Virus record (IMG/VR): IMGVR_UViG_3300043418_000114
Span: 124,001 to 188,000 of that record
Direction: 5' to 3' (one strand)
Length of the DNA stretch: 64,000 nucleotides
Numbering within the stretch: the stretch's first letter is position 1; every line of letters begins with the position of its first letter. This document shows, in pieces, positions 986 to 49,747 of this stretch. The notes below the pieces were generated by a model, which saw nothing but the letters and a program-made list of their open reading frames with translations, was not told the origin of the DNA and ran no database searches. The position numbers and the translations under genes are program-made.

Positions 986-1024
986 AGTAATTTTTTCTAA
1001 AAAATATAAATTTCTTGGAAATTG

Positions 1025-1052
1025 TATAAATATTCTTGTCGTCATATTTATA
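1025..1052. promoter_or_regulatory. Divergent pair of T4-like late promoters
   Basis: TATAAATA on + at 1025-1032 and on - at 1052-1045, between divergent genes. Confidence 0.7.
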
Positions 1053-1064
1053 TTAGGAGGAACG

Positions 1065-2045
1065 ATGAAAAAACTTTTAGCAACACTCACACTAGTTATA
1101 TTACCTTTGTTCGCATTCGCATGGGAACCATCTAAGCCGGTGACTGTTATTGTGGGTAACACACCTGGAGCAGGCAACGAAATCGCATTTAGGAAACTAG
1201 CAGAGATTGTGCAGAAACAAAACCCAAAGTTTGTTTATGTCGTACAAAACATTCCAGGTGCTGATTCTGTGGTAGCAAATAATAAGGTACTAGATGCTCC
1301 GACTGACGGCTATACAATCAATTTGCCAAGTCATATGAGTTCATACGTGACTAATGATATTTGGGAAAAGAAAGTTAAAAAGTATCAATGGGATAGTTTC
1401 ATCGACGTACTTACAATGGGTAAGAGTCCTCTGGTATTGGTCGCTAGTACAAAAAGTAATGTTAACACGCCAATCGACTTCATTAGATATCTGCATACTT
1501 CTACAAAGCCGATTAATATCGCAGTAGGTGGTGGAGCACACAGAACAGCATATGAGTATTTGATGGAATCTGCACATGGTGACAAGAATCTAATCACCCA
1601 CGTGAAGTTCAATGGTCCGATGCCAGCAGTGTCGAGCGTAGCACAATATGATGGTAAGACGGGTACAGAGTTCGGTATCATACCAATTGCAGTTGCTCGT
1701 TCGTTGATTGATGCAGGTAAAGTTAAACCTATCGGATTCACTGGCACAAGACACATGCCGCAATACCCAGATGTTCCGTTATTGAACACAGTAGCACCTG
1801 GGATTAACGTGTATGCCGCATGGTCAATTCAACTGCCACCTAACACTAACAAAGAGATTGTAGATTGGTATCAAAAAGCATTTAGTACCGCAGTACGTAG
1901 TAAAGAATATGCAGAATGGTGCAAATTAAATGTAGTGTTCTATTCAGAAGACGAATTGACTCCGGTTGGTCTAAAGAAACACATGCAAGAATTACGCACA
2001 ACGTTCTTACCTGTACTAAGTAAGATAGACTTATCTAAGGAATAA
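1065..2045 (+). CDS. tctC: Bug/TctC tripartite tricarboxylate transporter substrate-binding protein
   Basis: Signal peptide, WEPSKPVTVIVGNTPGAG, VQNIPGA, APTDGYT, PQYPDVP; AGGAGG RBS before ATG 1065. Confidence 0.85.
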   Translation: MKKLLATLTLVILPLFAFAWEPSKPVTVIVGNTPGAGNEIAFRKLAEIVQKQNPKFVYVVQNIPGADSVVANNKVLDAPTDGYTINLPSHMSSYVTNDIWEKKVKKYQWDSFIDVLTMGKSPLVLVASTKSNVNTPIDFIRYLHTSTKPINIAVGGGAHRTAYEYLMESAHGDKNLITHVKFNGPMPAVSSVAQYDGKTGTEFGIIPIAVARSLIDAGKVKPIGFTGTRHMPQYPDVPLLNTVAPGINVYAAWSIQLPPNTNKEIVDWYQKAFSTAVRSKEYAEWCKLNVVFYSEDELTPVGLKKHMQELRTTFLPVLSKIDLSKE

Positions 2046-2047
2046 AA

Positions 2048-2674
2048 TTGAAGTATATCTTTGTAGCTGGTGCTCCAGGCAGTAAATGGAGCAGTGTCGT
2101 AAAGAACATTTATTATAGTCCTAGTATTGACCACAGTGATTATAGTGATGAACGTACTTACTATCACGATGCTAGTGGTGAAATGCAGTTAATGCATTTA
2201 GGTGCATATTTTGATCCAGGAATGGAATTCTCGTTACCAGAATCAATGTCAACACTTACAAAGGCGCAAGCAGAAGAAAGATTTGATGCACCATTTTCAG
2301 GCGAAGGTGTTCGCATCATCAAGAGTCACATCTTTTGTTATCAAGAGAATATCGAGTACTTACGTGAGTTGTGGCCTGAATGCCCAATCGTAACTGTGCT
2401 TAGACCTAATGACAGTTGTTTAGGATGGTGGGTACGATGTGGTCATTTCGACATTACATATCCCATCTACGAGCCTTACTACAAAGACTTAAAGACAATG
2501 GCTAAAATCATTGACAAGCAAAACTATGAACTTGAAGAATGTACGTTTAGAAACAAAGCAACCAGAGTTTACAACAACACTAGACTTGCAATGATTCTCG
2601 GCATCCAATCGCCACCTGATGAATATCGCCACAGCTACATTGACAATGATATCACAGTAAGCGTAATACTATGA
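2048..2674 (+). CDS. Sulfotransferase-fold / P-loop-like protein
   Basis: N-terminal IFVAGAPGSKWSS loop, IIKSH and PIVTVLR segments as in sulfotransferase-like proteins. Confidence 0.45.
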   Translation: MKYIFVAGAPGSKWSSVVKNIYYSPSIDHSDYSDERTYYHDASGEMQLMHLGAYFDPGMEFSLPESMSTLTKAQAEERFDAPFSGEGVRIIKSHIFCYQENIEYLRELWPECPIVTVLRPNDSCLGWWVRCGHFDITYPIYEPYYKDLKTMAKIIDKQNYELEECTFRNKATRVYNNTRLAMILGIQSPPDEYRHSYIDNDITVSVIL

Positions 2675-3303
2675 AACAAATGTTAATCATTACCGGGCCA
2701 CAAGGGTCTGGTAATCACGTTTTCAGCAAAATCTTTGCGTTACATAACGAAGTATATGGCTGGAAAGACTTACTTAATGAATATTGGATAGCACATGATT
2801 ATGAACCATTTAGTGATTGTTGGGATATGCCTAGCTTACTTAATAGCATTGACTGGACAAACATGGATAATTACGTCACTAGTATCAGTTGCCCATATGC
2901 AAACGAAGGAGTGGCTACAATCCCTCGGTACAAAGATTTCATCAGTGCATTAACTCAACTTGGTATCACTGTTAAAGTCTGTATCATTGGTAGAGACCAA
3001 ACTATCCTTAGACACCAGCAACAAAGAGTAAGAGATAGACACAGTTTACCTGATTTCGAAGGTGAACTAGAATTTTTAAATTCACTAGAGCCAATATATC
3101 TAAGTACAGAGTTGTTATATTTGTACAAAGACTATTATTTAAAGAGTTTGAGTAAAATCTTAGACTTCCCTATAGCATATGATGACCCTAGAGTGTTTGA
3201 AATATTGAAACAAGATGCAAACGAGAAATACTTTCAGAGTATTCCTCAACAAGAGTTAGACAAAACAGTCCGCAAAGTTAGCGGACTAAAGGAAAAAGAA
3301 TGA
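2671..3303 (+). CDS. Sulfotransferase-fold / P-loop-like protein
   Basis: LIITGPQGSGNH loop and VCIIGRD segment; ATGA-coupled to upstream gene. Confidence 0.45.
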   Translation: MKQMLIITGPQGSGNHVFSKIFALHNEVYGWKDLLNEYWIAHDYEPFSDCWDMPSLLNSIDWTNMDNYVTSISCPYANEGVATIPRYKDFISALTQLGITVKVCIIGRDQTILRHQQQRVRDRHSLPDFEGELEFLNSLEPIYLSTELLYLYKDYYLKSLSKILDFPIAYDDPRVFEILKQDANEKYFQSIPQQELDKTVRKVSGLKEKE

Positions 3304-10939: not shown

Positions 10940-11233
10940 ATGGCATTGACTCCAGCAAATGACCGCATCTTGGTCAAACCGCAGGAAGCAAAGACTAGAA
11001 CAGAATCGGGATTTTATATTCCTGATTCTGCTCAAGAAAAACTGCCACGTGGTACTGTATTCAAGGTAGGCAAAGGTCGTAGACTTGATGATGGTAGTTT
11101 TGCTTCACCTGAAGTCAAAGAGGGTGATGTAGTTATCTACACTCAAACAGGCCCTCAGAAGATTACAGTTGGTAATCAAGATTTCATCGTCATGAAAGAA
11201 GAAGATATTCTTTGCATCGTTGATGAAGAATAA
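10940..11233 (+). CDS. groES: Co-chaperonin GroES (Cpn10)
   Basis: LTPANDRILVK, TESGFYIP, VKEGDVVIY, KEEDILCIV. Confidence 0.92.
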   Translation: MALTPANDRILVKPQEAKTRTESGFYIPDSAQEKLPRGTVFKVGKGRRLDDGSFASPEVKEGDVVIYTQTGPQKITVGNQDFIVMKEEDILCIVDEE

Positions 11234-38931: not shown

Positions 38932-39185
38932 ACGAACGAATTAAAGAACTTGCTGAACAGGCTGGCTGTGGCTATTTGTATGATTATTCAGCAGACGGAC
39001 ATGCAATGGTTTGTAATGTAAATGACATTGAAAAGTTTGCCGAGTTGCTTGTCAAGGAATGTGCTATGCTTGTCGAGGGATTTATACTTGATCAAGAGGT
39101 AGCTCTTGACGAATATGTTGAATATGAAGCAAGTAGTGTACTTCGAGAACACTTTGAAATAAACAGTGAAAGTAAATCTACATGA
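38928..39185 (+). CDS. MNERIKEL-family cassette protein
   Basis: MNERIKELAEQA...EKFAELLVKEC...REHFEI. Confidence 0.75.
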   Translation: MNERIKELAEQAGCGYLYDYSADGHAMVCNVNDIEKFAELLVKECAMLVEGFILDQEVALDEYVEYEASSVLREHFEINSESKST

Positions 39186-39379
39186 AAGAATCAGTAAGCC
39201 GTGAAGAACTCTCTGAAATTATCAACCGAGAGTTATTGGCATTTGTCGGGCATCCTAATACCGAAAAGACTAGACAAGCCATCTTTGAAATGATATTATC
39301 TTTAGTTAATAGGTTTCCTGAGAAAATTGATTTGATTCAAGAAATCATACAAGAAGGAATGAAGAATGAATCCACATGA
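39182..39379 (+). CDS. Hypothetical protein
   Basis: Coupled ORF. Confidence 0.5.
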   Translation: MKESVSREELSEIINRELLAFVGHPNTEKTRQAIFEMILSLVNRFPEKIDLIQEIIQEGMKNEST

Positions 39380-39572
39380 TTTAGAGGGCAAGAAATATAT
39401 ATTTGAAGATGGTGCTGAAATATTCATTAAGCACGTAAAAGACGTTGATGCTGAACGCGGTACACTTCAGGTAACATATCTTGTCACAACTAGTCCTAGA
39501 AGCATACCTAGACAACTCATACTACCATGGCAAGAGTTTCAGGAGCACTATGGACACTTGTTTAAAGAATAA
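39366..39572 (+). CDS. Hypothetical protein
   Basis: 68 aa with AGGA RBS. Confidence 0.55.
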   Translation: MNPHDLEGKKYIFEDGAEIFIKHVKDVDAERGTLQVTYLVTTSPRSIPRQLILPWQEFQEHYGHLFKE

Positions 39573-39579
39573 ATATTAG

Positions 39580-41289
39580 ATGTATAAAAAAATCATAAAT
39601 TTACCAAATCTAACTCTATTGGTCGCACTGTGTTTGAGTACAGTAGCGGCCTATTATAGTATTATTGGTTTAACTGCAATTTTTGCAGGGGCAGTTATTC
39701 CAGTTATTATCATGGGTAGTATGCTCGAAGTGGCAAAGATTACTACCACTGTATGGCTACGCAAATACTGGAATCGTGCTGGCTGGGTCATCAAGATGTA
39801 CCTTGTTCCTGCTGTTATTGCATTGGCTCTACTCACTTCGATGGGTATCTTTGGATTCTTGTCTAAAGCTCACTTAGATCAAAACATTGGATCTGGTGAT
39901 GTACAAGCAAAAGTAGCATTGCTTGATGAAAAGATCAACATTCAACGTGACAACATTAAAGCTAGCAAAGCGGCACTAGCACAAATGGATACCCAAGTCA
40001 ATGATATCATGACTAAGGGTGATAGCGAACGCAGTGTTGAACGTTCCGTTATGATTCGCAAGCAACAAGCCAAAGAACGTGCTAGCTTGATGAAAGATAT
40101 TGAAGTTGCCAATAAAGAGATTCAAGCTCTTAATGCAGAACGTGCGCCTATTGCAAGTGAACTCCGCAAAGTAGAAGCCGAAGTTGGCCCTATCAAGTAT
40201 ATTGCCGCCTTAATTTATGGTGACAATGCAGATCAAAACATGCTAGAGTCTGCCGTTCGTTGGGTTATCATTCTGTTAGTTGTTGTATTCGACCCACTTG
40301 CCATTGCACTTGTATTAGCTGGCAATCAAAGTAAAGAATGGAACGATGACGAACCTGAATACGAACCTGATAATGGTCCTATTAATGAAGAAGCACTGGC
40401 ATTATTACGTGCCAAAGTAGAACAAGATTTACCAACTGGTGAATTAATCACAAAGTCAGAATTGTTTCCTGATCCAGAAGAAGGTAACAAACTTATTGAT
40501 GAACTCGAAAAAGAAGTACCAGAAGTTGTTCTTCCAAATGAACCAATGCAGTTTGTTGATTTTGGTGAGCATCCAAAAGACTACGATGAAAATCAAGTTG
40601 AAGAACCTGTGGTTGAAGAAGAAAAATCTATTCTTGAACAACATCCATACTTGTTGAATGGGTTTGATCACTTCTCTAATACTACGCCAATTGTTCATAA
40701 GCCAGAGCCAAAGAAAGTTGACTTCACTCAAGGCAGATATGAAGTTAGCGATCCAGTCATGAGCTATAATATTGTCTTGCCAGAGCCAGCGATTGAACCA
40801 GCTCCAATGCCAGAGCCAACAAGTGAAGTGTTCGATAGACCAGGTGACTATATTGTTCCAGAAGACACTTCGGAACTTATTACACCAGAAGTCAAACAAC
40901 AATTTGTCGAAGAAGAAGATGGCTACGTGATCTATGACGGATTGCACATGAGTAAAGATGCCTTAAAAGGAATGCATCCAGAGTTGTTCACATTGAAAGC
41001 TGATGAAGGTCGACCAATTAAAACTAACTTTGGTATTGGTTTCCCATCACAAGCTGATAAAGGTGATATCTTTGTTCGTGTTGATATGCTACCAAATCGT
41101 GTGTACAAATTTGATGGACACGGCAAGTGGATAGAAGTCAACAAAGAAATCACTGACACATATCTACACAATCAAAAATATCTACAACACCTTGTCAACA
41201 TGATTGAACGTGGTCAATATGATGTAGAATTGCTTTCTGAAAATGAGAAGGCTGAGATTGAAGAATATCTACGCAAGCAAAATGGTTGA
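39580..41289 (+). CDS. Late multi-TM coiled-coil protein with acidic Pro-rich linker
   Basis: ATAAATA at 39569; three N-terminal TMs, long heptad region, fourth TM, Glu/Pro-rich linker, small C-terminal domain. Confidence 0.75.
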   Translation: MYKKIINLPNLTLLVALCLSTVAAYYSIIGLTAIFAGAVIPVIIMGSMLEVAKITTTVWLRKYWNRAGWVIKMYLVPAVIALALLTSMGIFGFLSKAHLDQNIGSGDVQAKVALLDEKINIQRDNIKASKAALAQMDTQVNDIMTKGDSERSVERSVMIRKQQAKERASLMKDIEVANKEIQALNAERAPIASELRKVEAEVGPIKYIAALIYGDNADQNMLESAVRWVIILLVVVFDPLAIALVLAGNQSKEWNDDEPEYEPDNGPINEEALALLRAKVEQDLPTGELITKSELFPDPEEGNKLIDELEKEVPEVVLPNEPMQFVDFGEHPKDYDENQVEEPVVEEEKSILEQHPYLLNGFDHFSNTTPIVHKPEPKKVDFTQGRYEVSDPVMSYNIVLPEPAIEPAPMPEPTSEVFDRPGDYIVPEDTSELITPEVKQQFVEEEDGYVIYDGLHMSKDALKGMHPELFTLKADEGRPIKTNFGIGFPSQADKGDIFVRVDMLPNRVYKFDGHGKWIEVNKEITDTYLHNQKYLQHLVNMIERGQYDVELLSENEKAEIEEYLRKQNG

Positions 41290-41314
41290 CAGTAAATCAC
41301 TTTGGTGATACACT
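41286..41314 (+). promoter_or_regulatory. sigma70 promoter
   Basis: TTGACA-GTAAATCACTTTGGTGA-TACACT. Confidence 0.7.
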
Positions 41315-41343
41315 GCAATCATTCTTAACTAACGGAGTAATCC

Positions 41344-41976
41344 ATGAAATTTAAACTCTTTGCAATTGCCGCAGTTACGGCGTTAATGACTGGCTGTGGC
41401 ACAACCAAGCTAACTGAGGATCCTATTCGCAGTCAGAAACTGTCCACTACTTTCGTTAACGAAAGCATCAAGCTGGAAACTGATTGCAAGTGGTACACTA
41501 TCAACAAAAGCGAGTGCAACATTGTTTCAATTGAATCTACTGGCGTAGCTACTACAAACGGTAACACTGAAAGCAATCGTCGTGTTGCCTTGATTCGTGC
41601 TGGTGACCGCGCACGTGCCGCCGTCCGCCACTTCATTCAAGAAGATGTGTCAAGCTCTCGTGTTAACCAGACGATTGCCAAGAACGTAGAGAAGGCAAAT
41701 GATCGCCTCAAGTCTAAGATGGACGGTGTTGATCCAGTTTCTATGAGCGACGATGAAGCCTCCAAAGATACTAACTGGTCAATTCGTGAAAATGCAAACA
41801 ATACTGCATATAGCTTGACTGAAACCATTCGTGTCAATGCCGCTGGTATCTTGAAGGGTTTCAAAGTTATCAAACAAGAAATGGTCGGACCTCAAGAAGT
41901 CGCTGTTACTATTCGCTGGGACCTCGAATCTGAGCGTATGTCCAACCAACTGCGTCGAAAGTTTGACGGACGATGA
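41344..41976 (+). CDS. Lipoprotein (LPP20-like)
   Basis: Lipobox LMTG-C; STGVA...RRVALIRAGDRARAAV. Confidence 0.6.
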   Translation: MKFKLFAIAAVTALMTGCGTTKLTEDPIRSQKLSTTFVNESIKLETDCKWYTINKSECNIVSIESTGVATTNGNTESNRRVALIRAGDRARAAVRHFIQEDVSSSRVNQTIAKNVEKANDRLKSKMDGVDPVSMSDDEASKDTNWSIRENANNTAYSLTETIRVNAAGILKGFKVIKQEMVGPQEVAVTIRWDLESERMSNQLRRKFDGR

Positions 41977-42977
41977 AATACATTCTAGCGATAGTTGTCT
42001 TACTACTCGCTGGATGTGCCACCACTACCAAGTCTGAATTCATTCGTACTACGGGTGAAGGCAACACGTTCGAGCAAGCCAAACTGGCTGCCTTTCGTGA
42101 AGCTATTCAGACTAAAGTAGGTGCCGTCGTCCTCAGTGAGCGTTTACACAACATTGAAAAAACAGTCCAGGACGATATCACCGTTCATAGCTCTGGCTAT
42201 GTAGATGACTATAAAGTTATCAATACGACAAACATCAGCGGCACATATCGTGTCACCGTAGATGTATTGGTAGCTGAAAGTAAGTTAGCTAATCAAATCC
42301 TAACAACCGCAAAAGCAGAAAAAGATTTTGCAGGTGACCGAGCAACTAATGCCTATTCTACATACATGAATCAAGCAAACGATGCAGACAAAATTGTTGC
42401 ACGAGTGCTTAGTGGATATCCACGACATGCTTTCATCCTTGAACAAGGCCCATATGTGATTGGTGTAGATCAGTATCGATCTGGTAAAATCGTGCTACCA
42501 TTCAAAGTTCGATGGAGTAAAGACTATCTGACCGCAGTGGATGAAATTGTTCATCGATATGAAGACAAGCGTGGCGTTGTTGACAAGATCATGTACAAAC
42601 CAATGAACATTGTTGAATTTCATTCTAAAAATGATAACTACTTCGGCAAGAATTCAAAATATGAGATTGTTGATCAAAGACTGCTAAATACCATTGTCAA
42701 TAGCGTTTATGGCGCAAATGAAATGCGTATTCGTACCGATGTGTATGACGGCAATCACAATTCCATGTATACTACGTGCGTAGTGCCGTGGTGGCGTAAT
42801 TACGGCAAACAATTCTTTTCATCGGACACGTATAACAATATTCTGTTTGATGGCAATCTGGAGCGTAGTGGTGAGTTAACTCTTCCAGTGACTAATGCCA
42901 ATTTACAGATGTACGCTAGAGCCGTGTCTATTGAGTTGTCAATTGTGGCAGTAAAAGATTGTCCACGAGAGCGTTAA
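41973..42977 (+). CDS. Lipoprotein with LPP20/FlgT-N-like domain
   Basis: Lipobox LLAG-C; TGEGNTFEQAKLAAFREAIQ...SSGYVDDYKVI. Confidence 0.6.
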   Translation: MKYILAIVVLLLAGCATTTKSEFIRTTGEGNTFEQAKLAAFREAIQTKVGAVVLSERLHNIEKTVQDDITVHSSGYVDDYKVINTTNISGTYRVTVDVLVAESKLANQILTTAKAEKDFAGDRATNAYSTYMNQANDADKIVARVLSGYPRHAFILEQGPYVIGVDQYRSGKIVLPFKVRWSKDYLTAVDEIVHRYEDKRGVVDKIMYKPMNIVEFHSKNDNYFGKNSKYEIVDQRLLNTIVNSVYGANEMRIRTDVYDGNHNSMYTTCVVPWWRNYGKQFFSSDTYNNILFDGNLERSGELTLPVTNANLQMYARAVSIELSIVAVKDCPRER

Positions 42978-42990
42978 GATAAATTAATAT

Positions 42991-44193
42991 ATGAGTACTG
43001 AAAACAAACTGAACCATTGCTCCTTTTGTGGCAATCATAAAGATGTAGTTAAAAAATTGATCGTTGGCGATGACGTTGCTATCTGTAGCGACTGTATTGA
43101 CCTGTGTACTCAATTAATTGTTGATGACGGCACGGTAGAGGACAATTCTATCAAGACCAATGATCAATATGATCCTGCCTTAATTAAGACTTACTTGGAT
43201 CAACACGTTATTGGCCAAGATAGTGCTAAAATGGTACTATCGGTGGCTATCGCAAATCACTATAAGCGAATCACTCATCCACCTAAAGATTTAGATATCT
43301 CGAAGGGCAACGTTCTTATCGTAGGTCCCACTGGCAGTGGTAAAACATTGCTTGCGAAAACCGTAGCGAAATACCTTAACGTTCCATTTGTAGTGGCTGA
43401 TGCAACTAGCTTAACCGAAGCTGGCTATGTAGGTGATGACGTTGAATCAATGATCAGTATGCTAGTTGCTAATGCAAACGGCGATACTAAACTAGCAGAG
43501 CGCGGAATCGTGTTTGTTGATGAAATCGACAAGATTGCACGTAAGGGTGAGTCTACCAGCTTAACCAGGGACGTTTCAGGCGAAGGTGTACAACAAGCAC
43601 TATTGAAACTAGTCGAAGGTACTGTGTGTCGTGTTCCTGCACAGGGTGGTCGTAAGCACCCAGGTGGAGATATGCTAGAAGTCAACACCAAGAACATCCT
43701 GTTCATTGCTGGTGGCGCATTCGTTGGCTTGAAAGACGTTATCGAGCGTAGAACTAACGGCGGTGGCATTGGATTCGGAGCAACTGTAAAGAAATCCCAA
43801 CAAGAAAGCAATTTAGGTGAAGTCACTCCTGATGACTTGACTAAGTTCGGCATGATTCCTGAGTTTATCGGTCGATTCACTACTACTGTCGCTATTGAGA
43901 CACTAACAAAAGACGAACTTAAGCGTGTTCTTCTTGAGGTCAAAAACAACTATATCGCCCAGTATCAGTATCTGTTCTCCATTGACGGCATTGAGTTGGT
44001 ATTGGAGGATTCAGCACTGGATCAGATCGTAGATAATTGCGTCAAACTCAAGACTGGCGCACGTGGCTTGCACACTGAGATTGAACGTGCCCTAATGCCA
44101 CACATGTTTAACACTGGTAAATATCGTCAAAACAAGATTAAAAAGATAAATATTAATCAGGAGTTAATTTTAAACCCAAAACCAATTGTATGA
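42991..44193 (+). CDS. clpX: ATP-dependent Clp protease ATP-binding subunit
   Basis: CSFC/CSDC zinc finger, GPTGSGKT, FVDEIDK, RDVSGEGVQQALLK, RKH and IGF loops. Confidence 0.97.
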   Translation: MSTENKLNHCSFCGNHKDVVKKLIVGDDVAICSDCIDLCTQLIVDDGTVEDNSIKTNDQYDPALIKTYLDQHVIGQDSAKMVLSVAIANHYKRITHPPKDLDISKGNVLIVGPTGSGKTLLAKTVAKYLNVPFVVADATSLTEAGYVGDDVESMISMLVANANGDTKLAERGIVFVDEIDKIARKGESTSLTRDVSGEGVQQALLKLVEGTVCRVPAQGGRKHPGGDMLEVNTKNILFIAGGAFVGLKDVIERRTNGGGIGFGATVKKSQQESNLGEVTPDDLTKFGMIPEFIGRFTTTVAIETLTKDELKRVLLEVKNNYIAQYQYLFSIDGIELVLEDSALDQIVDNCVKLKTGARGLHTEIERALMPHMFNTGKYRQNKIKKININQELILNPKPIV

Positions 44194-44408
44194 GAAAAGG
44201 CAGACGAGTAATTGTTAATGATGGCAACGTTGAAAAGGCGTTGCGTAAATTTAAAAAGAAGATCGCGGATCAGGACCTGCTACAGGAAGTTCGTGATCGT
44301 GGACAGTTTGTTAAACCTACAATTAAGCGTAAGTTAGCTAAGAGCCAGGCTAAACGTAGATGGCAAAAGTACTTGCGTGATCAGAGTTTGCCTAAGAAAC
44401 TCTATTAA
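44190..44408 (+). CDS. rpsU: Ribosomal protein bS21
   Basis: VNDGNVEKALRKFKKKI...LLQEVRDR..FVKPTIKRK. Confidence 0.9.
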   Translation: MRKGRRVIVNDGNVEKALRKFKKKIADQDLLQEVRDRGQFVKPTIKRKLAKSQAKRRWQKYLRDQSLPKKLY

Positions 44409-44445
44409 ACCAAAATATTAGAATTTTTTGCGTATTTTTAGTTAA

Positions 44446-44517
44446 ATAAATACGACAGTAGATGCCGATGGTCGGGTCTACTACATGTCATAACTTGCTT
44501 ATTAAAGGAGAAAACAA
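44446..44517 (+). promoter_or_regulatory. Late promoter plus ROSE-like structured leader of hsp20
   Basis: ATAAATA at 44446; hairpin 44458-44481; CUUGCUU pairs with AAGGAG with a bulged G. Confidence 0.6.
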
Positions 44518-44955
44518 ATGACAAAAACTTTATCCCTTCGTTCCCTCGACATTCCGTCAATCCACAAATTTGGTATCGGCTTCGATAACATGTTTGATGA
44601 ATTAATGCGAATGAATGCTCAACAATCCCTTAACTATCCTCCATACAACATTCTCAAGAATACCGATGATTCATTCGATATTCAAGTGGCTGTTTCTGGC
44701 TTTAGTGAAGGTGAGATTGAGGTCAATCTTGACAATCGAGTATTGACTATCAAGGGTCAGAAGGCGGAAGATGTAGTTGCTGAATATCTGCATAAAGGTA
44801 TCAGTACACGTGATTTCGTGCGTGAGTTCACTCTAGCCGAACACGTTGAGGTAATCAATGCCTCACAAAAAGATGGTATTTTGACTATTCAACTAGAACG
44901 CATCGTTCCAGAAGAAAAGAAACCGAAAAATATCCAGATATCTTATTCTAAATAA
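44518..44955 (+). CDS. hsp20: Small heat shock protein (Hsp20/IbpA-like)
   Basis: IGFDNMF, NYPPYNI, AVSGF, YLHKGIS.R.F, DGILTI.LER.VPEEKKP. Confidence 0.95.
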
Positions 44956-45623
44956 GAATTGCATTTTTCAAAATGCCATCGTCGCATTCCTGGGGTAGCT
45001 CCAGATTTGCCACAATGCGGACAGGTAATCATGATTGAATTAGGATTAACATTCTTTTGAAAATTATGATTACCTTCTCGAACTAGCTCACGCGCCCGTA
45101 CTGATTCTTGGTTATATGTTCGACCACTTGATCTGATTCCAATACTAATATTTTTTCGATGTTGATCCGTCTTGAATCCTTTATAATTATCTTTGTTGGA
45201 TTTAGGGCCTTGTAATTTTCGGATAAACTCTGGATTTTTAACTTTCGCTTGATTTGCTAATTTAATTTTATTTGCATGATCTACTGATTTTGGACCTCTG
45301 AGTTTTTCTCTCGTTTCCAATGAATGCTTATGGCCAGTAGTTCCCTCTCCACCATCGGTTTGATTTCTTAGTATACCTGTCATGTTGTCCTTGCGACCAT
45401 ACCATCTTATCATGCGTCTTTCCAACGCAAAAGCTCCAATTTCAGATAGTGATTGTTCCATGATGATAATTCTACATTCATCTACTGGCAAATTTATGCA
45501 ATGATTTTTGTGCCATGCCCTACCATTAAATCCCTTTCCGATATAGTACGGCGTACCATCGTCGCGCAAATATGCGTAAACATAGAACCCAATCGGTGGA
45601 TTCTTTTTTGAATAAATAGTCAT
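44943..45623 (-). mobile_element. Free-standing GIY-YIG-like homing endonuclease gene with NUMOD-type repeats
   Basis: [45 protein letters not shown]-terminal CPHCG; antisense insertion with its own late promoter. Confidence 0.8.
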
Positions 45624-45646
45624 GCTGATTGCTCCTTGAAAGCGTT

Positions 45647-45694
45647 AGAGTAGTCGGAGAGGTTAGAGACTCGCGGACTACACTTTTATTTATA
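45647..45694 (-). promoter_or_regulatory. Late promoter and leader hairpin of the endonuclease gene
   Basis: TATAAATA (45694-45687) then a GTAGTC...GACTAC stem upstream of an AGGAG RBS. Confidence 0.6.
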
Positions 45695-45703
45695 CCAAAC
45701 CAA

Positions 45704-45764
45704 TTGATATTACTTAATTTAGTGATATAATTAACGAGAGTAGTCGAAAGGCTACTCACTTTTT
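45704..45764 (+). promoter_or_regulatory. sigma70 promoter with GNRA leader hairpin before clpS
   Basis: TTGATA-N16-TATAAT; GAGTAGTC-GAAA-GGCTACTC then ACTTTTT. Confidence 0.55.
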
Positions 45765-45783
45765 AAATTTAACCGTAAAGATT

Positions 45784-46092
45784 ATGCCTACCAAAACTGA
45801 TACAAAAATTAAAATCAAACCCAACGTTGCTCTACAAGAACCACCGTTGTTTAAGATCATTTATATCAACGATGACGTAACGAGCATGGAGTTTGTTGTG
45901 TCTAGTTTGATTGACTACTTCAATTACACCGAAGATACAGCCGAGAATATCACCATGGATATTCACAATCAAGGTAGTGCAGTTGTCGCTATTTTACCTT
46001 ACGAGATTGCCGAACAAAAAGGCATCGAGGTAACTCTTGACGCACGTAGTCAAGGATATCCACTTCAAGTCAAAGTGGAAGCTGAGGCTTAA
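45784..46092 (+). CDS. clpS: N-degron adaptor ClpS
   Basis: PPLFKIIYINDDVTSMEFV, DIHNQGSAVV, YEIAEQK, GYPL. Confidence 0.92.
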   Translation: MPTKTDTKIKIKPNVALQEPPLFKIIYINDDVTSMEFVVSSLIDYFNYTEDTAENITMDIHNQGSAVVAILPYEIAEQKGIEVTLDARSQGYPLQVKVEAEA

Positions 46093-46781
46093 ACCTCTAT
46101 TCTTTTTGCCCAATAAGGGCTCTTATCATAACAAGCGTTATTAATGTAGTTGATGCCATTTAAATTGGTGTCAACTACTTTTTTATATGTGCCGTACACC
46201 CAGTGATTGATCTTGTGTTCAGTATCTGCTTCTAATGCTATCTTCAATGGCAGATGACCATTCACGAAACTTGGCGCTTCGCCAAAATATAGCTTTTCAT
46301 CTGGCACACTATTCGATACTACAATAATATTCTTAACATCTAAGTGTTTTTGTAGTCTTTCGATTGTACTCTTGAGGTAAATAATATCCTCATGGCGTAA
46401 TTCTTCGACTTTTAAATCAGTGACCATGTCACTTGGTAACGTGTTGCCGTACCATCCATTTGCTCCTGCAATCGCAATCCCATCGATAATGACGACATGA
46501 TGATGCAGTAGAGCCAAGTTACGTATACTACTACATAGCTTGTGTATTTCTTTGGTTCTAGTATCAACGTCAGCTACACCATCATATTCCAGTGAACCGA
46601 GGGAATAGAACACTCCTTGATAAAACTTACTCAAATGAGATAGGGTTTGATGTATGGTTTTCAAGTCAGGACTAATATTACCAGCGATTATGCAATATAA
46701 ACTAGTCGCCTTGCCTTCCCAATTTAAACTTGCACCTGGTGCAAGATTTAAATCGCTAATTACATCAAACCCAATCTTCAT
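46089..46781 (-). CDS. Calcineurin-like metallophosphoesterase homolog with degenerate metal ligands
   Basis: SDLNL / AGNI / LGSLEY / VSNSVP / YGTYK in place of DLH / GD / GNHE / GHH / GHTH. Confidence 0.65.
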   Translation of the reverse strand: MKIGFDVISDLNLAPGASLNWEGKATSLYCIIAGNISPDLKTIHQTLSHLSKFYQGVFYSLGSLEYDGVADVDTRTKEIHKLCSSIRNLALLHHHVVIIDGIAIAGANGWYGNTLPSDMVTDLKVEELRHEDIIYLKSTIERLQKHLDVKNIIVVSNSVPDEKLYFGEAPSFVNGHLPLKIALEADTEHKINHWVYGTYKKVVDTNLNGINYINNACYDKSPYWAKRIEV

Positions 46782-47110
46782 TATTTTGCTACGCGAATTT
46801 TAGCTTTTTTGACTACGGCTTTAGTAGCCTTAGCTTTAGCTGGTTGCTTCGCCGAAGCGGGTTGCTTCTTTGTAGCTTGCTTCTCAGCAGGGGCTTTCTT
46901 GGCACGTGCTTTCTTTGGGGCGGCAACTGGTACCTCAACTGCAGGTGCAGGTTGAACTACTGGTTTTACTTCCTCAACGACAGGTGTTTCTACCTTGTAC
47001 GCGGCTACCGGTGCCTCAACAACAGACTCAACTTCTTGTTTACGTTTGCTGATGAAATACACTAGTGCACCGATGACTACGATGCCAATTGCAATGTCTA
47101 ATGGACTCAT
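46781..47110 (-). CDS. Membrane-anchored Lys/Ala/Pro-rich protein
   Basis: N-terminal TM plus histone-like tail; AGGAG RBS. Confidence 0.7.
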   Translation of the reverse strand: MSPLDIAIGIVVIGALVYFISKRKQEVESVVEAPVAAYKVETPVVEEVKPVVQPAPAVEVPVAAPKKARAKKAPAEKQATKKQPASAKQPAKAKATKAVVKKAKIRVAK

Positions 47111-47243
47111 TTTTATCTCCTAAACATATATTTACTATTGGACATTTACTACTAATTTTTTGTCTAAAAGTAAACCAAAAGATTTGATATGTGATAGTTG
47201 ATTTTTATATACTACATATCTCAATTAATTATTAAGGAGTATT

Positions 47244-47834
47244 ATGAGTCTAGTCCCTATCGTCATCGAACAAACATCTAAGGGTGAACGTAGTTATGAC
47301 ATTTACAGCCGTCTACTGAAAGATCGTGTTATTTTGCTTGAAGGTGAAGTCCATGATCAAATGGCAAACCTTATCGTTGCTCAACTACTCTTTTTAGAAA
47401 GCGAAGACCCTGGCAAAGATATCAACATGTATATCAACTCTCCAGGTGGCAGTGTCACCGCTGGCATGGCAATCTATGACACCATGCAATTCATTAAGCC
47501 AGATATCCATACTATCGTGATGGGTCAAGCGTGTTCGATGGGTTCATTGCTAGCACAAGCTGGAAGCCCTGGCAAGCGTTTCATGTTGCCTAATGCTCGT
47601 CATATGATTCACCAACCATCCGGTGGTGCTCGTGGCATGCAATCGGATATCGAAATCTCCTACAAAGAAATCACTTACTTGAAAAAGCGTTTGACTGAAA
47701 TCTACGTCAAACACAACTCCGCTGGTAAGACATACGAAGAATTCGAACGTGACATGGATCGTGATAAGTTCATGAGCGCAGACGAAGCATTAGCTTATGG
47801 TCTAATCGATCAAGTGTTGGAGAAACGTCCTTGA
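47244..47834 (+). CDS. clpP: ATP-dependent Clp protease proteolytic subunit
   Basis: [27 protein letters not shown] (Ser), MIHQP (His), DRD (Asp). Confidence 0.97.
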
Positions 47835-48502
47835 TTAAGTATACACCAGTTCCAGTATCAGAACACGAATCTATTTTAGGTAAGAATTTTAAAACTAAGT
47901 TTGCGGCAGAAATGTGTGCGTATTACGCACCATTTCAAAACAAAAAGCGAGCCATTCAAGTAGCAAAAGAAACCTGGGAATATGCAGTGTCTGACAGTAT
48001 CCCTAAAGCATCATGGGTTGGTGCAGGCAACTACGTAGCAGACGTTAGGGCGCCGACAGCCGACTTAGATGTTAAGGGTCTAAGCATCAAGAGCATCACT
48101 AATAAGCAAAGCTCAGAGGCAAGTGTGTTGCAAAACAACAAACAAGAAAACGATGGTTTCGGTAAGTTGTTTGAAAGCAAGGACTACAAATCCCTCAAAA
48201 CTATGTTTGTCGATCCGATTGATGAAAAGATCAAAGATACTAATAATCTACATCTTTTAGCTATCGTCAGGGAAACTTCTACTAAGAAAGTTTACTACTC
48301 ATTGTTGAAAGTTACTAAGTCCAACTTAAATAACAAACAATTTTTAGACCGAATGGTGGTCGATGGTAAACGCAGTATATCACTTCCTATGATTGATCCG
48401 CAATTCGGTTACACTTATCTTTATATCGCCAAGCGACGAATTGAGATTAGACTGAACTGCGAAGGCATGAAAGACTACTTAGTTTATTCACACTCTTATT
48501 AA
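47831..48502 (+). CDS. Hypothetical protein, possibly a PD-(D/E)xK nuclease
   Basis: KETWEY...VADV...LDVKGLS spacing. Confidence 0.35.
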
Positions 48503-48505
48503 TGG

Positions 48506-48533
48506 TTGACAATGGATTACTCCAGTGTATAAT
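48506..48533 (+). promoter_or_regulatory. sigma70 promoter
   Basis: TTGACA-N16-TATAAT. Confidence 0.7.
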
Positions 48534-48723
48534 GTACAAACATTCACAACTGGAGTAATTCCATGAAGTCTTTCATTCTCGGTCTTGTTGTTGTTCTCGG
48601 TGCTCTTGGTGGCATTGAATCTAGCATCAACACTATTCCCATGATTCAATCATTTGGCATTGCAATCGTCGGTCTCGCCATCATGTTGATCGGTGTCAGT
48701 AATCTCCAGTCAGGCAACTAATC

Positions 48724-48924
48724 ATGTATACTCTTGTACTATTAGCAAACATGACACTTCTTGGTACATATGCCAACATGGCATCATGTCAGAATGCGAT
48801 GCATGAAATCTATGCAGTCAAAATGAATCCTCATGGCAAGCGTTTACCAGAAGTAGACGAAGCAATCAAGGCGCGGATGCAGTACTCAAAAGATTATGTG
48901 TGTTTGCCTGTATCAAAAGATTGA
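48724..48924 (+). CDS. Small hypothetical protein
   Basis: 66 aa with a Cys pair. Confidence 0.5.
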   Translation: MYTLVLLANMTLLGTYANMASCQNAMHEIYAVKMNPHGKRLPEVDEAIKARMQYSKDYVCLPVSKD

Positions 48925-48969
48925 CAACAAATGGGTTTGGGTATATAATTCATTCATTGTTTAACACAC
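48921..48969 (+). promoter_or_regulatory. Early promoter cassette, copy A
   Basis: TTGACA-N17-TATAATTCATTCATTGTTTAACACAC. Confidence 0.8.
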
Positions 48970-48981
48970 CAGGAGATTCAG

Positions 48982-49230
48982 ATGCAAATCACCCGCTTCA
49001 ACAAAGATGAAAAGTTTCGTGTCATTATCAGTGGCATTTCTTTTTACGCAACTGCGAGTGAAATTCGAAATGGTGTAGGTGACACAGCAAAGCCTAATGC
49101 GGCAATTCAAAAATGTCTTGATGCACTTGAGTTCATTCGATCGGGTCAAGGCATTGCAGATCAATGCACGACAGGCCTTGCTGGCACATGGGAAGGCTTC
49201 AACGTTCAACTCGACAAACACGTTCGATAA
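48982..49230 (+). CDS. Hypothetical early protein
   Basis: AGGAG RBS. Confidence 0.65.
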   Translation: MQITRFNKDEKFRVIISGISFYATASEIRNGVGDTAKPNAAIQKCLDALEFIRSGQGIADQCTTGLAGTWEGFNVQLDKHVR

Positions 49231-49241
49231 GGAGTACTACC

Positions 49242-49445
49242 ATGGGTTATAAAATTCTCCGTGAGCGTGATGCTAAGTGGCAACCTCGCAAAGGTCTTGA
49301 AGGTCCTTTCTTCTATCCCAATGGTCAAGTCTTGTACTACGATCCTAAAGAAGGAATGTACTGGGACCCGACAACTGACTTTTTCGTTGAGTACGAACAA
49401 GTTCAGGAATTGCAAAATATGTTTTTGGAAGTTTTGAAAAAATGA
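49242..49445 (+). CDS. Hypothetical early protein
   Basis: RKGLEGPFFYPNGQVLYYDPKEGMYWDP; AGGAG RBS. Confidence 0.7.
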   Translation: MGYKILRERDAKWQPRKGLEGPFFYPNGQVLYYDPKEGMYWDPTTDFFVEYEQVQELQNMFLEVLKK

Positions 49446-49747
49446 AAATCATTCTAGCTCTCGTTATTGCACTCGCCGTAGGCACATGTTATGCCAAGGG
49501 AGGCGGAGGCGGTGGTGGTCATGGAGGTGGTGGCGGCCATGGTGGCGGCCATGCTAGCTCCAGTGGTCACTCGTCATCGTCTGGTGGCCATTCAACTTCT
49601 ACTGCAAAGAGTGGATCGACCAGTGGTGCTCATGAATCTGCACCAGCAAAGTCAACAAGTACTACTTCATCTACATGGTTTCCTTGGTGGAGTCGTGGCG
49701 GCTCTAGTTCGACCCAATGCGACAAGAATAAAGATAAAAACTGTTGA
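49442..49747 (+). CDS. Exported Gly/Ser/His-rich protein
   Basis: Signal peptide plus low-complexity body and a terminal Cys pair. Confidence 0.6.
   Translation: MKIILALVIALAVGTCYAKGGGGGGGHGGGGGHGGGHASSSGHSSSSGGHSTSTAKSGSTSGAHESAPAKSTSTTSSTWFPWWSRGGSSSTQCDKNKDKNC

What the first reader, a model, noticed from the sequence alone, without database searches (positions are those of the whole stretch)
42991..47834. Complete phage proteostasis hub: ClpX, bS21, Hsp20, ClpS and ClpP within 5 kb
Seen: all catalytic and docking motifs are intact (ClpX IGF and RKH loops, ClpP Ser-His-Asp, ClpS NDDxT/H pocket). Known: ClpXP is self-sufficient, whereas ClpS delivers N-degron substrates to ClpA, which is not in the window. 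Inference: the phage runs a private ClpXP and redirects host ClpAP, so it may selectively destroy host regulators or defence proteins.
Basis: partly seen in the sequence, partly recalled or inferred. Interest (0 to 1): 0.6.

Follow-up and report, generated by a model that had tools for sequence, protein, structure and literature searches.

The report
Jumbo-phage Clp protease and chaperone genes
A 364-kb uncultivated phage carries intact copies of the bacterial protein-degradation genes ClpX, ClpP and ClpS next to a small heat-shock protein and ribosomal protein bS21, and it also has its own ClpA elsewhere, so it looks self-sufficient rather than a hijacker of the host's ClpA; gene sets like this are already known in related giant phages.

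Summary
Window 42991-47834 encodes canonical ClpX, bS21, an IbpA-like small Hsp, ClpS and ClpP, with every checked motif intact. Three unmentioned minus-strand genes lie between them.

The window is part of a complete 364,247-bp phage with a T4-type capsid. More than 500 IMG/VR contigs carry a ClpX relative. The best 80 (72-80% identity), plus 5 metagenome loci, were inspected. All that reach far enough keep the order ClpX-(bS21)-Hsp20-ClpS-...-ClpP, and the genes are under strong purifying selection.

ClpA is missing from the window but present in the phage, 57 kb upstream, next to a DnaJ-like gene. Five large relatives also have it. A complex model places phage ClpS on the phage ClpA N-domain (0.84, best control 0.00).

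The phage also carries:
- a two-piece tmRNA whose tag ends in ALAA, the classic ClpX degron;
- a GroES.

It lacks SmpB, SspB, DnaK, GroEL and Lon.

The best reading is a phage-borne ClpXP plus ClpAPS protein quality-control set. Its substrates are unknown.

Similar gene sets are published for Atu_ph07-like phages, and bS21 near Hsp20 and Clp genes has been reported. This is a new member of a known kind.

The parts
42991..44193 (+). ClpX, the AAA+ unfoldase (400 aa). It has the Cys4 zinc-finger N-domain, Walker A/B, GYVG pore loop, RKH loop, IGF ClpP-docking loop and sensor-2 GARGL.
   Evidence: The motifs are kept in 67 distinct clade sequences: [I/M]GF 67/67, RKH 66/67.
44190..44408 (+). Ribosomal protein bS21 (72 aa). 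Its start overlaps the ClpX stop (ATGA), which suggests translational coupling.
   Evidence: The same 4-nt overlap is seen in L008, L009, L010 and L011. bS21 is absent in about 12 of 85 related loci.
44518..44955 (+). Small heat-shock protein (Hsp20/IbpA-like, 145 aa) with an alpha-crystallin domain and a C-terminal I-x-I motif (IQI).
   Evidence: I-x-I is present in 56/56 distinct clade sequences.
44943..45623 (-). Free-standing homing-endonuclease-like ORF (226 aa). It is an insertion specific to this phage and not part of the module.
   Evidence: PHROG hits to homing and intron-like endonucleases. Absent from all 85 related loci. The insertion spans about 44956-45696 and is followed by a second copy of the last ~30 nt of hsp20.
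45704..45757 (+). Promoter-like site (TTGATA-16-TATAAT, 45704-45731) followed by a hairpin plus T-run (45738-45757), between hsp20 and clpS. The hairpin is conserved in relative L008.
   Evidence: These are consensus matches only; the number of promoter-like sites in the region is not above shuffled expectation.
45784..46092 (+). ClpS, the N-degron adaptor (102 aa). It keeps the pocket residues N-D-x-x-T-x-M and His, the ClpA-contact stretch YEIAEQK, and a ~20-residue N-terminal extension.
   Evidence: Complex model with the phage ClpA N-domain: 0.84 against a best control of 0.00.
46089..46781 (-). Conserved 230-aa protein with a calcineurin-like phosphoesterase fold. Its role is unknown. It always sits tail-to-tail with clpS.
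   Evidence: No Pfam, NCBIfam or PHROG hit. Atlas: own viral cluster of 1,496 members, neighbouring Metallophos clusters, TM 0.83-0.94. Present in every related locus that reaches it.
46781..47110 (-). 109-aa ORF with a hydrophobic N-terminal stretch read as a membrane anchor, and a Lys/Ala/Pro-rich tail. Function unknown.
   Evidence: A short ORF of 94-144 aa holds this position in relatives, but the sequence diverges quickly.
47244..47834 (+). ClpP, the proteolytic subunit (196 aa), with the Ser-His-Asp triad and no propeptide. A promoter-like site lies at 47184-47213.
   Evidence: It is the only ClpP-family gene in the genome. GQACSMG is kept in 50/50 and HQP in 50/50 distinct clade sequences.
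47831..48502 (+). 223-aa ORF that overlaps the ClpP stop by 4 nt. It may be a restriction-endonuclease-like protein. It is variable and found only in the closest relatives.
   Evidence: The Atlas result is a feature-based lead only.
39580..42977 (+). Three upstream same-strand genes: a 569-aa ORF read as a membrane protein, and two ORFs read as lipoproteins (210 and 334 aa, each with a Cys-containing signal sequence). The last ends 13 nt before clpX, so they may be co-transcribed with it.
   Evidence: No family hits for the 569-aa and 334-aa ORFs. Syntenic in most relatives.
10940..11233 (+). GroES (Cpn10) co-chaperonin, 97 aa. It lies elsewhere in the window, and the genome has no GroEL.
   Evidence: Among six large genomes only this phage has a clear copy.

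Best explanation
The interval is the core of a phage-borne protein quality-control set.

Shown by sequence:
- The phage encodes canonical ClpX and ClpP, that is ClpXP. It also encodes ClpS and, 57 kb upstream and outside the window, its own ClpA. Together these make ClpAPS on the single phage ClpP.
- In the same block lie a small Hsp and ribosomal protein bS21, which is translationally coupled to ClpX.
- Elsewhere in the genome are a zinc-finger-less DnaJ-like co-chaperone whose end overlaps the clpA start, a GroES, and a two-piece tmRNA. The tmRNA tag, ANDSVFALAA, ends in the LAA-type degron that ClpX reads.

Inferred mechanism:
- During a long, protein-heavy infection the phage supplies its own degradation machines while host gene expression decays.
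- Ribosomes stalled on broken mRNAs are rescued by the phage tmRNA, which needs host SmpB and alanyl-tRNA synthetase.
- The tagged fragments are degraded by phage ClpXP or ClpAP.
- ClpS steers ClpAP towards N-degron substrates.
- The small Hsp holds aggregation-prone proteins.
- DnaJ and GroES recruit host DnaK and GroEL.

Which proteins are degraded, phage or host, is not known.
For: - Gene identities and motifs.
- Own ClpA with an IGF docking loop, next to DnaJ. Both are conserved, together with a downstream 240-aa gene, in five large relatives at about 80% ClpA identity.
- ClpS on the ClpA N-domain: ipSAE 0.84, best of 3 controls 0.00. In calibration the mark was reached by 51 of 78 solved complexes and 2 of 108 mismatched pairs. 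The runs agree in at least 85% of contacts and the partner pLDDT is at least 86. ClpS contacts are residues 69-81, including E74, E77 and Q78; K79 is conserved in this stretch but is not among the confident contacts.
- tmRNA_permuted RF04321: 113.7 bits against a gathering score of 47. It is above the gathering score in all five relatives; ARAGORN read a tag in four of them, ending in LAA or IAA.
- Module order is kept in all related loci that extend far enough. More than 500 IMG/VR contigs, and hundreds of metagenome proteins at 75-97% identity, carry a ClpX relative.
- Purifying selection: dN/dS 0.02-0.09 against the closest relative. Functional residues are invariant across 50-67 distinct sequences.
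- A separate T4 gp21-type prohead protease sits next to the capsid gene, so ClpP is not needed for head maturation.
- SmpB, SspB, Hsp70, GroEL and Lon are absent, so the co-chaperones and tmRNA must use host partners.
- Published context: host clpP and clpX transcripts fall during phage infection while ssrA persists (PMC13478754).
Against: - There is no expression, activity or substrate evidence.
- The complex model may score high from memory of the solved E. coli ClpS-ClpA complex. It cannot tell phage ClpA from host ClpA as the partner.
- The whole neighbourhood is syntenic, so the conserved order may reflect vertical inheritance rather than selection for linkage.
- In the related cultured phage Phosso the same genes are dispersed.
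- bS21 is missing in about 12 of 85 loci, and GroES in most of the large relatives. These two are accessory.
- The tmRNA-ClpX link is not obligate across jumbo phages. Atu_ph07 has ClpX but no tmRNA, and the phage G tag ends in QVA.
Confidence: 0.6

Rival explanations
1. The phage runs a private ClpXP and uses ClpS to redirect the host's ClpAP, so that host regulators or defence proteins are selectively destroyed.
For: - ClpS keeps the ClpA-contact residues and the N-degron pocket, so it could also bind a proteobacterial host ClpA.
- The idea is published for phages that carry ClpS alone (PMC7824862).
- No substrate data exclude host targets.
Against: - The phage has its own full-length ClpA with a ClpP-docking loop. 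It is conserved in all five large relatives.
- Phage ClpS models onto it with ipSAE 0.84 against 0.00.
- No L/F-transferase or other degron-creating enzyme was found in six genomes.
- Nothing points to particular host targets.
Confidence: 0.15
2. A virion-assembly role. ClpP acts as, or assists, the head-maturation protease, and ClpX and ClpA act as unfoldases or translocases for proteins packed into the large capsid.
For: - Many ClpP-family proteins in phages are prohead proteases; the top PHROG hits are 'head maturation protease'.
- Iyer et al. suggest translocase or assembly roles for phage ClpA and ClpX.
Against: - The ClpP scores as cellular ClpP (318 bits). It falls below the cut-off of the ClpP-related head-maturation model (102 against 120).
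- The genome has a separate gp21-type prohead protease beside the capsid gene, 117 kb away.
- The block lies among replication, repair and accessory genes, not structural genes.
Confidence: 0.1
3. A counter-defence against attacks on translation. Together with 45 tRNAs, the tmRNA and the Clp proteases keep ribosomes running and clear truncated products when host nucleases cut tRNAs or mRNAs during abortive-infection responses.
For: - One genome combines 45 tRNA genes, a tmRNA with a ClpX-type tag, bS21 and ClpXP/ClpAP.
- The tmRNA and ClpA are conserved in all five large relatives.
Against: This is inference only. Large tRNA sets, tmRNA and bS21 are common in huge phages and are usually explained by codon use or translation takeover. 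No defence system or host is known for this clade.
Confidence: 0.15

Closest known systems
Bacterial ClpXP and ClpAPS proteases (E. coli type)
   Same: The best solved matches are E. coli ClpX (400 bits), E. coli ClpA (599 bits, collinear) and bacterial ClpP chains at 262-264 bits, E. coli among them. The best ClpS match is 4yjm 'ClpS 2' (59.7 bits), with the E. coli-type ClpS chains close behind at 55 bits. All catalytic, pore, docking and degron-pocket motifs are kept.
   Different: - The genes are phage-encoded.
- ClpP has no propeptide.
- ClpS and ClpA fall below the NCBIfam equivalog cut-offs (75 against 149; 786 against 993).
- The gene arrangement differs. From general knowledge, E. coli has clpP-clpX and clpS-clpA pairs. 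Here clpX, clpS and clpP share one block with bS21 and an sHsp, and clpA is paired with a dnaJ-like gene.
- There is no SspB.
Clp gene sets of Atu_ph07-like jumbo phages (Agrobacterium phage Atu_ph07, Sinorhizobium phages AP-J-162 and Phosso)
   Same: - Capsid protein 65.9% identical to Phosso's, so the same capsid supergroup.
- These phages are annotated with ClpX, ClpA, ClpP, ClpS, Hsp20, DnaJ and bS21. In Atu_ph07, DnaJ is gp293 next to ClpA gp292. AP-J-162 also has a tmRNA.
- Identity to Phosso: ClpP 70.7%, ClpX 50.5%, ClpA 41.9%.
   Different: In Phosso the four Clp genes are tens to hundreds of kb apart (at 30, 126, 381 and 398 kb), not clustered. Atu_ph07 also has ClpB and lacks a tmRNA. 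The hosts are alphaproteobacteria; the host here is unknown.
Other phages with Clp genes: PA5oct-like Pseudomonas phages and Vibrio phage 2.275.O (closest capsids), and Bacillus phage G
   Same: - Capsid protein about 66% identical to PA5oct-like phages and to Vibrio phage 2.275.O.
- PA5oct-like phages carry ClpA and ClpS. Vibrio phage 2.275.O carries ClpA.
- Bacillus phage G carries adjacent ClpP and ClpX.
   Different: Identities are low (ClpS 34%, ClpA about 40%). No full-length ClpX match was listed for the PA5oct-like phages. None of these shows the ClpX-bS21-Hsp20-ClpS-ClpP block.
bS21-encoding freshwater phages and the survey of bS21 neighbourhoods (Chen et al. 2022, PMC9723584)
   Same: These phages carry bS21 together with chaperones and a Clp protease. 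In public phage genomes Hsp20 (n=127) and two Clp protease families (n=50 and 47) were counted within ten genes of bS21. That is the same co-location as here.
   Different: In their curated phages, whose predicted hosts are Bacteroidetes, bS21 sits among late structural genes. Here it is coupled to clpX, far from the capsid genes.
Phage co-chaperonins that take over host GroEL (T4 gp31 type)
   Same: A co-chaperone without its chaperone. This phage has GroES and a J-domain protein but no GroEL or Hsp70, so it must work through host partners. The comparison with T4 gp31 rests on general knowledge.
   Different: Here the co-chaperonin is a regular Cpn10-family GroES (90.6 bits), and it is found in only one of six large genomes of the clade.

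Membership tests
ClpX | N-terminal Cys4 zinc-binding domain | tested here: met
   PF06689 46.7 bits, residues 9-44. CxxC...CxxC is present in 67/67 distinct clade sequences.
ClpX | A single AAA+ module with Walker A/B, GYVG pore loop, RKH loop, IGF ClpP-docking loop and sensor-2 Arg | tested here: met
   Alignment to E. coli ClpX 8e91. Clade conservation.
ClpX | Score above the curated equivalog cut-offs | tested here: met
   NF003745 512.3 against 359; TIGR00382 479 against 370.75.
ClpX | Hexameric ATP-dependent unfoldase that activates ClpP | not testable with these tools
   Needs biochemistry.
ClpP (cellular type) | Ser-His-Asp catalytic triad in the ClpP fold | tested here: met
   Alignment to solved ClpP chains. 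GQACSMG 50/50 and HQP 50/50 distinct clade sequences.
ClpP (cellular type) | Score above the curated cut-off | tested here: inconclusive
   Subfamily model PRK00277: 318.1 against 249, passes. Equivalog TIGR00493: 303.6 against 308.6, just below.
ClpP (cellular type) | Distinct from ClpP-related phage head-maturation proteases | tested here: met
   NF045542 102.3, below its cut-off of 120. A separate gp21-type protease (PF03420, 95.5 bits) lies beside the capsid gene.
ClpS | ClpS fold and domain | tested here: met
   PF02617 86.9 against 23. The NCBIfam equivalog models all fall below cut-off (best 75.4 against 149), so it is a divergent member.
ClpS | N-degron pocket residues (E. coli N34, D35, T38, M40 and H66; numbering from general knowledge) | tested here: met
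   NDDVTSM and IHNQG in the window. N-D-x-x-T-x-[M/L/I] and the His are invariant in 56 distinct clade sequences; the third position varies D/N/E/T.
ClpS | Binds the ClpA N-domain | tested here: inconclusive
   Model only: ipSAE 0.84, best control 0.00; 51 of 78 solved pairs and 2 of 108 mismatches reach the mark. A like complex has been solved, so the pass shows likeness, not binding. The contact stretch E-I-A-E-Q-[K/R] is kept in 55/56 sequences.
ClpA | N-domain plus two AAA+ modules, without the ClpB middle domain, and with a ClpP-docking IG[LF] loop | tested here: met
   754 aa, collinear with E. coli ClpA 1ksf over residues 5-727 (598.6 bits; ClpB 479.5 bits). The loop reads QIGFGS. Pfam finds Clp_N, AAA, AAA_lid_9, AAA_2 and D2-small.
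ClpA | Score above the equivalog cut-off | tested here: not met
   TIGR02639 786 bits against 993. It has the ClpA architecture but is a divergent member.
Small heat-shock protein (Hsp20/alpha-crystallin) | Alpha-crystallin domain and a C-terminal I-x-I motif | tested here: met
   PF00011 69.2 against 20.8. The C-terminus contains IQI, and I-x-I is present in 56/56 clade sequences. The IbpA equivalog is not reached (114 against 212).
Ribosomal protein bS21 | Family model above cut-off | tested here: met
   TIGR00030 54.8 against 28.95; PF01165 52.1 against 27. Incorporation into ribosomes was not tested.
Two-piece (permuted) tmRNA | Covariance-model match above the gathering score, and a tag reading frame that ends in stop codons | tested here: met
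   RF04321 113.7 bits against 47, at C1:362011-362432. The tag ANDSVFALAA is followed by stops. Five relatives score 90-148 bits.
Two-piece (permuted) tmRNA | Partner protein SmpB | tested here: not met
   No SmpB in this phage or in five relatives. Function would depend on host SmpB.

The most novel reading that the evidence does not exclude
The clade carries a nearly closed tag-and-destroy circuit of its own. A phage two-piece tmRNA writes an LAA-type degron, which phage ClpXP and ClpAP read. bS21 is co-translated with ClpX. The circuit would work alongside or instead of the host system, to keep translation going when host defences cut mRNAs or tRNAs. It might also make the phage proteases orthogonal to host adaptors and regulators.
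Probability: 0.2. Interest if true: 0.65.

Novelty: new member of a known kind. Interest (0 to 1): 0.35.

Why it matters
Phage-encoded Clp proteases have been annotated in several giant phages, but none of the papers found here tests their function. This clade is very common in environmental metagenomes: more than 500 IMG/VR contigs carry a ClpX relative. It keeps both ATPases, the adaptor, the peptidase and a matching tmRNA under strong constraint. That makes it a good system for asking what a virus gains from bringing its own degradation machinery. The practical gain from this check is a correction: the phage does not need host ClpA.

Tried and rejected
- Megablast of the interval against 50,697 phage records found nothing. 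The phage has no close cultured relative.
No read or expression evidence was obtained and read laying was not used.
- Promoter-like sites in 39000-49500 are not more frequent than in shuffles (24 against 29 ± 4.8). Operon boundaries therefore rest only on spacing, on overlapping start and stop codons, and on one conserved hairpin.
- The scan of 185,579 species genomes with ClpX returned only cellular ClpX at 57% identity or less, from many phyla. The scan depends on exact 8-residue patterns, so it gave neither a host nor a reliable origin.
- Sought in the genome and not found: SmpB, SspB, Hsp70, GroEL, Lon, a second ClpP, ClpB and L/F-transferase.
- The idea that the genes are recent, decaying host captures is rejected. 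All frames are intact, dN/dS is 0.02-0.09, and the motifs are invariant.
- No gene trees were built. The bacterial sample available was too biased to root them.
- The host could not be determined. The 10-residue AND...ALAA tag and the two-piece tmRNA form only hint at a proteobacterium.

Full report
WHAT IS THERE

- ClpX, 42991-44193 (400 aa): NF003745 512 bits against a cut-off of 359.
- bS21, 44190-44408 (72 aa): TIGR00030 54.8 against 28.95.
- An Hsp20/IbpA-like small heat-shock protein, 44518-44955 (145 aa).
- ClpS, 45784-46092 (102 aa): PF02617 86.9 bits.
- ClpP, 47244-47834 (196 aa): PRK00277 318 against 249.

- ClpX has the Cys4 zinc finger, Walker A/B, the GYVG pore loop, RKH, IGF and the GARGL sensor.
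- ClpP has the Ser-His-Asp triad. It begins where the mature E. coli protein begins, so it has no propeptide.
- ClpS has the NDDVTSM and His pocket residues.

The ClpX stop and the bS21 start overlap as ATGA.

- A 226-aa homing-endonuclease-like gene (44943-45623; PHROG hits).
- A conserved 230-aa protein with a calcineurin-like phosphoesterase fold (46089-46781).
- A 109-aa Lys/Ala-rich ORF whose hydrophobic N-terminus looks like a membrane anchor (46781-47110).

WHERE IT SITS

The window is bases 124001-188000 of a single 364,247-bp IMG/VR virus record. The record has direct terminal repeats, an estimated completeness of 100% and 41% G+C.

It is a phage of the T4-capsid supergroup.
- It has a Gp23-family major capsid protein (330 bits).
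- That protein is about 66% identical to those of Vibrio phage 2.275.O, the PA5oct-like Pseudomonas phages and Sinorhizobium phage Phosso, and about 63-64% identical to the 350-380-kb E. coli jumbo phages.
- A gp21-type prohead protease lies next to the capsid gene.

No cultured phage is close at the DNA level.

THE KEY CORRECTION

ClpA is indeed absent from the window, but the phage has one.
- At C1:107775-110039, 57 kb upstream of clpX and 14 kb outside the window, lies a 754-aa gene.
- Its best solved match is E. coli ClpA: 599 bits, collinear over residues 5-727.
- It has the N-domain, both AAA+ modules and no ClpB middle domain. Its ClpP-docking loop reads IGF.
- Its start overlaps the end of a 269-aa DnaJ-like gene that has a J domain and a C-terminal domain but no zinc finger.

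A complex model of phage ClpS with residues 1-150 of phage ClpA gave ipSAE 0.84.
- The best of 3 controls scored 0.00.
- In calibration the mark was reached by 51 of 78 solved complexes and 2 of 108 mismatched pairs.
- The runs agree in at least 85% of contacts, and the partner pLDDT is at least 86.
- The ClpS contacts fall on residues 69-81, the YEIAEQK stretch. From general knowledge this corresponds to the E. coli ClpS residues that touch ClpA.
- A like complex has been solved, so the pass shows likeness. It does not prove that this copy binds, and it does not say which ClpA is bound.

REST OF THE PROTEOSTASIS INVENTORY

- ARAGORN and Rfam find a two-piece (permuted) tmRNA at C1:362011-362432: RF04321, 113.7 bits against a gathering score of 47. 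Its tag reads ANDSVFALAA. From general knowledge, a C-terminal LAA is the signal that ClpX reads on ssrA-tagged proteins.
- The window also encodes a GroES at 10940-11233.
- Not found in the genome: SmpB, SspB, Hsp70, GroEL, Lon, a second ClpP, ClpB and L/F-transferase.

So the phage brings complete Clp proteases, but only the co-chaperone halves of the DnaK and GroEL systems, and a tmRNA without its protein partner.

CONSERVATION

The ClpX has hundreds of relatives at 75-97% identity in metagenomes. Several lie on contigs of 345-361 kb. More than 500 IMG/VR contigs encode a relative.

Eighty-five related loci were inspected: the 80 best IMG/VR matches (72-80% identity) and 5 metagenome loci.
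- The order ClpX-(bS21)-Hsp20-ClpS-[230-aa gene, opposite strand]-...-ClpP is kept wherever the contig reaches far enough.
- bS21 is missing in about 12 loci.
- Variable insertions, including a SprT-like gene and a ~510-aa gene, sit before clpP in many loci.
- The upstream membrane-protein and lipoprotein-like genes are mostly syntenic as well. Conserved order alone therefore does not prove functional linkage.

Five large relatives (264-525 kb) were searched further.
- All carry ClpA at about 80% identity, with the DnaJ-like gene upstream.
- All carry a permuted tmRNA above the gathering score.
- ARAGORN read a tag in four of the five: ANDELYSLAA, ANDELFALAA, ANDSQFSIAA and ANDSQFALAA.

Against the closest relative the genes show dN/dS of 0.02-0.09. 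dS is partly saturated.

The functional residues are invariant over 50-67 distinct sequences:
- [I/M]GF, GYVG and Walker A/B in ClpX;
- the triad in ClpP;
- N-D-x-x-T-x-M, the His and E-x-x-E-x-[K/R] in ClpS.

These are working genes, not decaying captures.

THE ENDONUCLEASE INSERTION

The 226-aa endonuclease-like ORF is absent from all 85 relatives. The insertion spans about 44956-45696. It is followed by a second copy of the last ~30 nt of hsp20. After that come a promoter-like site and a hairpin with a T-run that is conserved in the closest relative, just before clpS. It is a mobile insertion and not part of the module.

HOW IT MOST LIKELY WORKS

Shown by sequence: the phage can make ClpXP and ClpAPS around one ClpP, a small Hsp, a J-protein, GroES, bS21 and a tmRNA with a ClpX-type tag.

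Inferred: during a long infection that produces a very large virion, host clpP and clpX messages decay. This has been seen for other phages (PMC13478754). The phage keeps protein quality control running with its own machines.
- tmRNA, using host SmpB, frees stalled ribosomes and tags the fragments.
- ClpXP and ClpAP remove the tagged fragments.
- ClpS shifts ClpAP towards N-degron substrates.
- The sHsp buffers aggregation.
- DnaJ and GroES recruit host DnaK and GroEL.

Regulated proteolysis of particular phage or host proteins is possible. Nothing here identifies targets.

RIVALS

It is not excluded as an additional activity.
- A virion-maturation role is weakened by the separate gp21-type protease, by the cellular-type score of ClpP (below the cut-off of the ClpP-related head-protease model), and by the non-structural neighbourhood. 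ClpP and ClpX were, however, found in phage G virions.
- A counter-defence role, keeping translation alive when host nucleases cut tRNA or mRNA, fits the 45 tRNAs plus tmRNA. It is pure inference.

COMPARISON WITH WHAT IS KNOWN

- The Atu_ph07 paper lists ClpX, ClpA, ClpB, ClpP, ClpS and a DnaJ adjacent to ClpA, and notes that ClpA is conserved in Rak2-like phages (PMC6102473).
- AP-J-162 has six Clp genes, Hsp20, DnaJ, S21 and a tmRNA (PMC11242549).
- Phosso has all four Clp genes, but they are dispersed.
- Iyer et al. record ClpP, ClpS, ClpA, ClpX and SprT-like peptidases in jumbo phages, and propose that phage ClpS feeds host ClpAP (PMC7824862).
- Chen et al. counted Hsp20 (n=127) and two Clp protease families (n=50 and 47) within ten genes of bS21 in public phage genomes (PMC9723584).

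The kind is therefore known, and even the co-location has been noted. New here are three things: the compact, conserved block in a very abundant uncultivated clade; the conserved pairing of that block with an own ClpA-DnaJ pair; and a two-piece tmRNA with an LAA-type tag.

LIMITS

- There are no expression or read data.
- The host is unknown.
- No gene trees were built.
- No alternative genetic code was needed for any gene discussed.

Noticed in passing
window 44943-45623 (-), insertion about 44956-45696: A homing-endonuclease-like ORF is inserted between hsp20 and clpS in this phage only (0 of 85 related loci). It overlaps the hsp20 stop by 13 nt and is followed by a duplicated copy of the last ~30 nt of hsp20.
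   Followed up: yes
window 10940-11233 (+): A GroES (Cpn10, 90.6 bits) with no GroEL in the genome. Among six large genomes of the clade only this one has a clear copy.
   Followed up: partly
genome C1:363408-363479 (outside the window; L004:5409-5480): A tRNA with anticodon CUA, an amber-suppressor type that ARAGORN calls 'Pyl', lies 1 kb from the tmRNA. TAG ends only 13 of 294 long ORFs, against 171 for TAA and 110 for TGA.
   Followed up: partly
genome C1:227532-227606 (outside the window): Within the 45-gene tRNA array, ARAGORN reports one tRNA of undetermined identity with a four-base anticodon (tttc).
   Followed up: no
genome C1:362011-362432 (L004:4012-4433): The tmRNA gene of this phage is about 130-170 nt longer than in five relatives (422 nt against 251-295 nt). 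The extra sequence lies in the intervening segment between the two pieces.
   Followed up: no
L076 / G005 (IMGVR_UViG_3300027749_002876, 524,565 bp): This relative has two ClpA copies, at 858-3029 and 188874-191039, and is about 1.5 times the usual genome size of the clade. It may be a concatemer or a misassembly.
   Followed up: no
window 39580-42977 (+): A 569-aa ORF read as a membrane protein, and two ORFs with Cys-containing signal sequences read as lipoproteins (210 and 334 aa), run directly into clpX with a 13-nt gap. They are syntenic in most relatives. The 569-aa and 334-aa ORFs have no family hits.
   Followed up: partly
window 47831-48502 (+): A 223-aa ORF overlaps the clpP stop by 4 nt. 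Language-model features resemble SmaI, ThaI or HinP1I-type restriction endonucleases. It is present only in the nearest relatives.
   Followed up: partly
L009:9472-11513, L010:9384-11420: In many relatives a SprT-like metallopeptidase gene and a ~510-aa gene lie between the Lys/Ala-rich ORF and clpP. Both are absent from the window phage.
   Followed up: no
window 48506-48533 and 48921-48949 (+): Two perfect 12/12 sigma-70 consensus promoter matches lie just downstream of the block.
   Followed up: no
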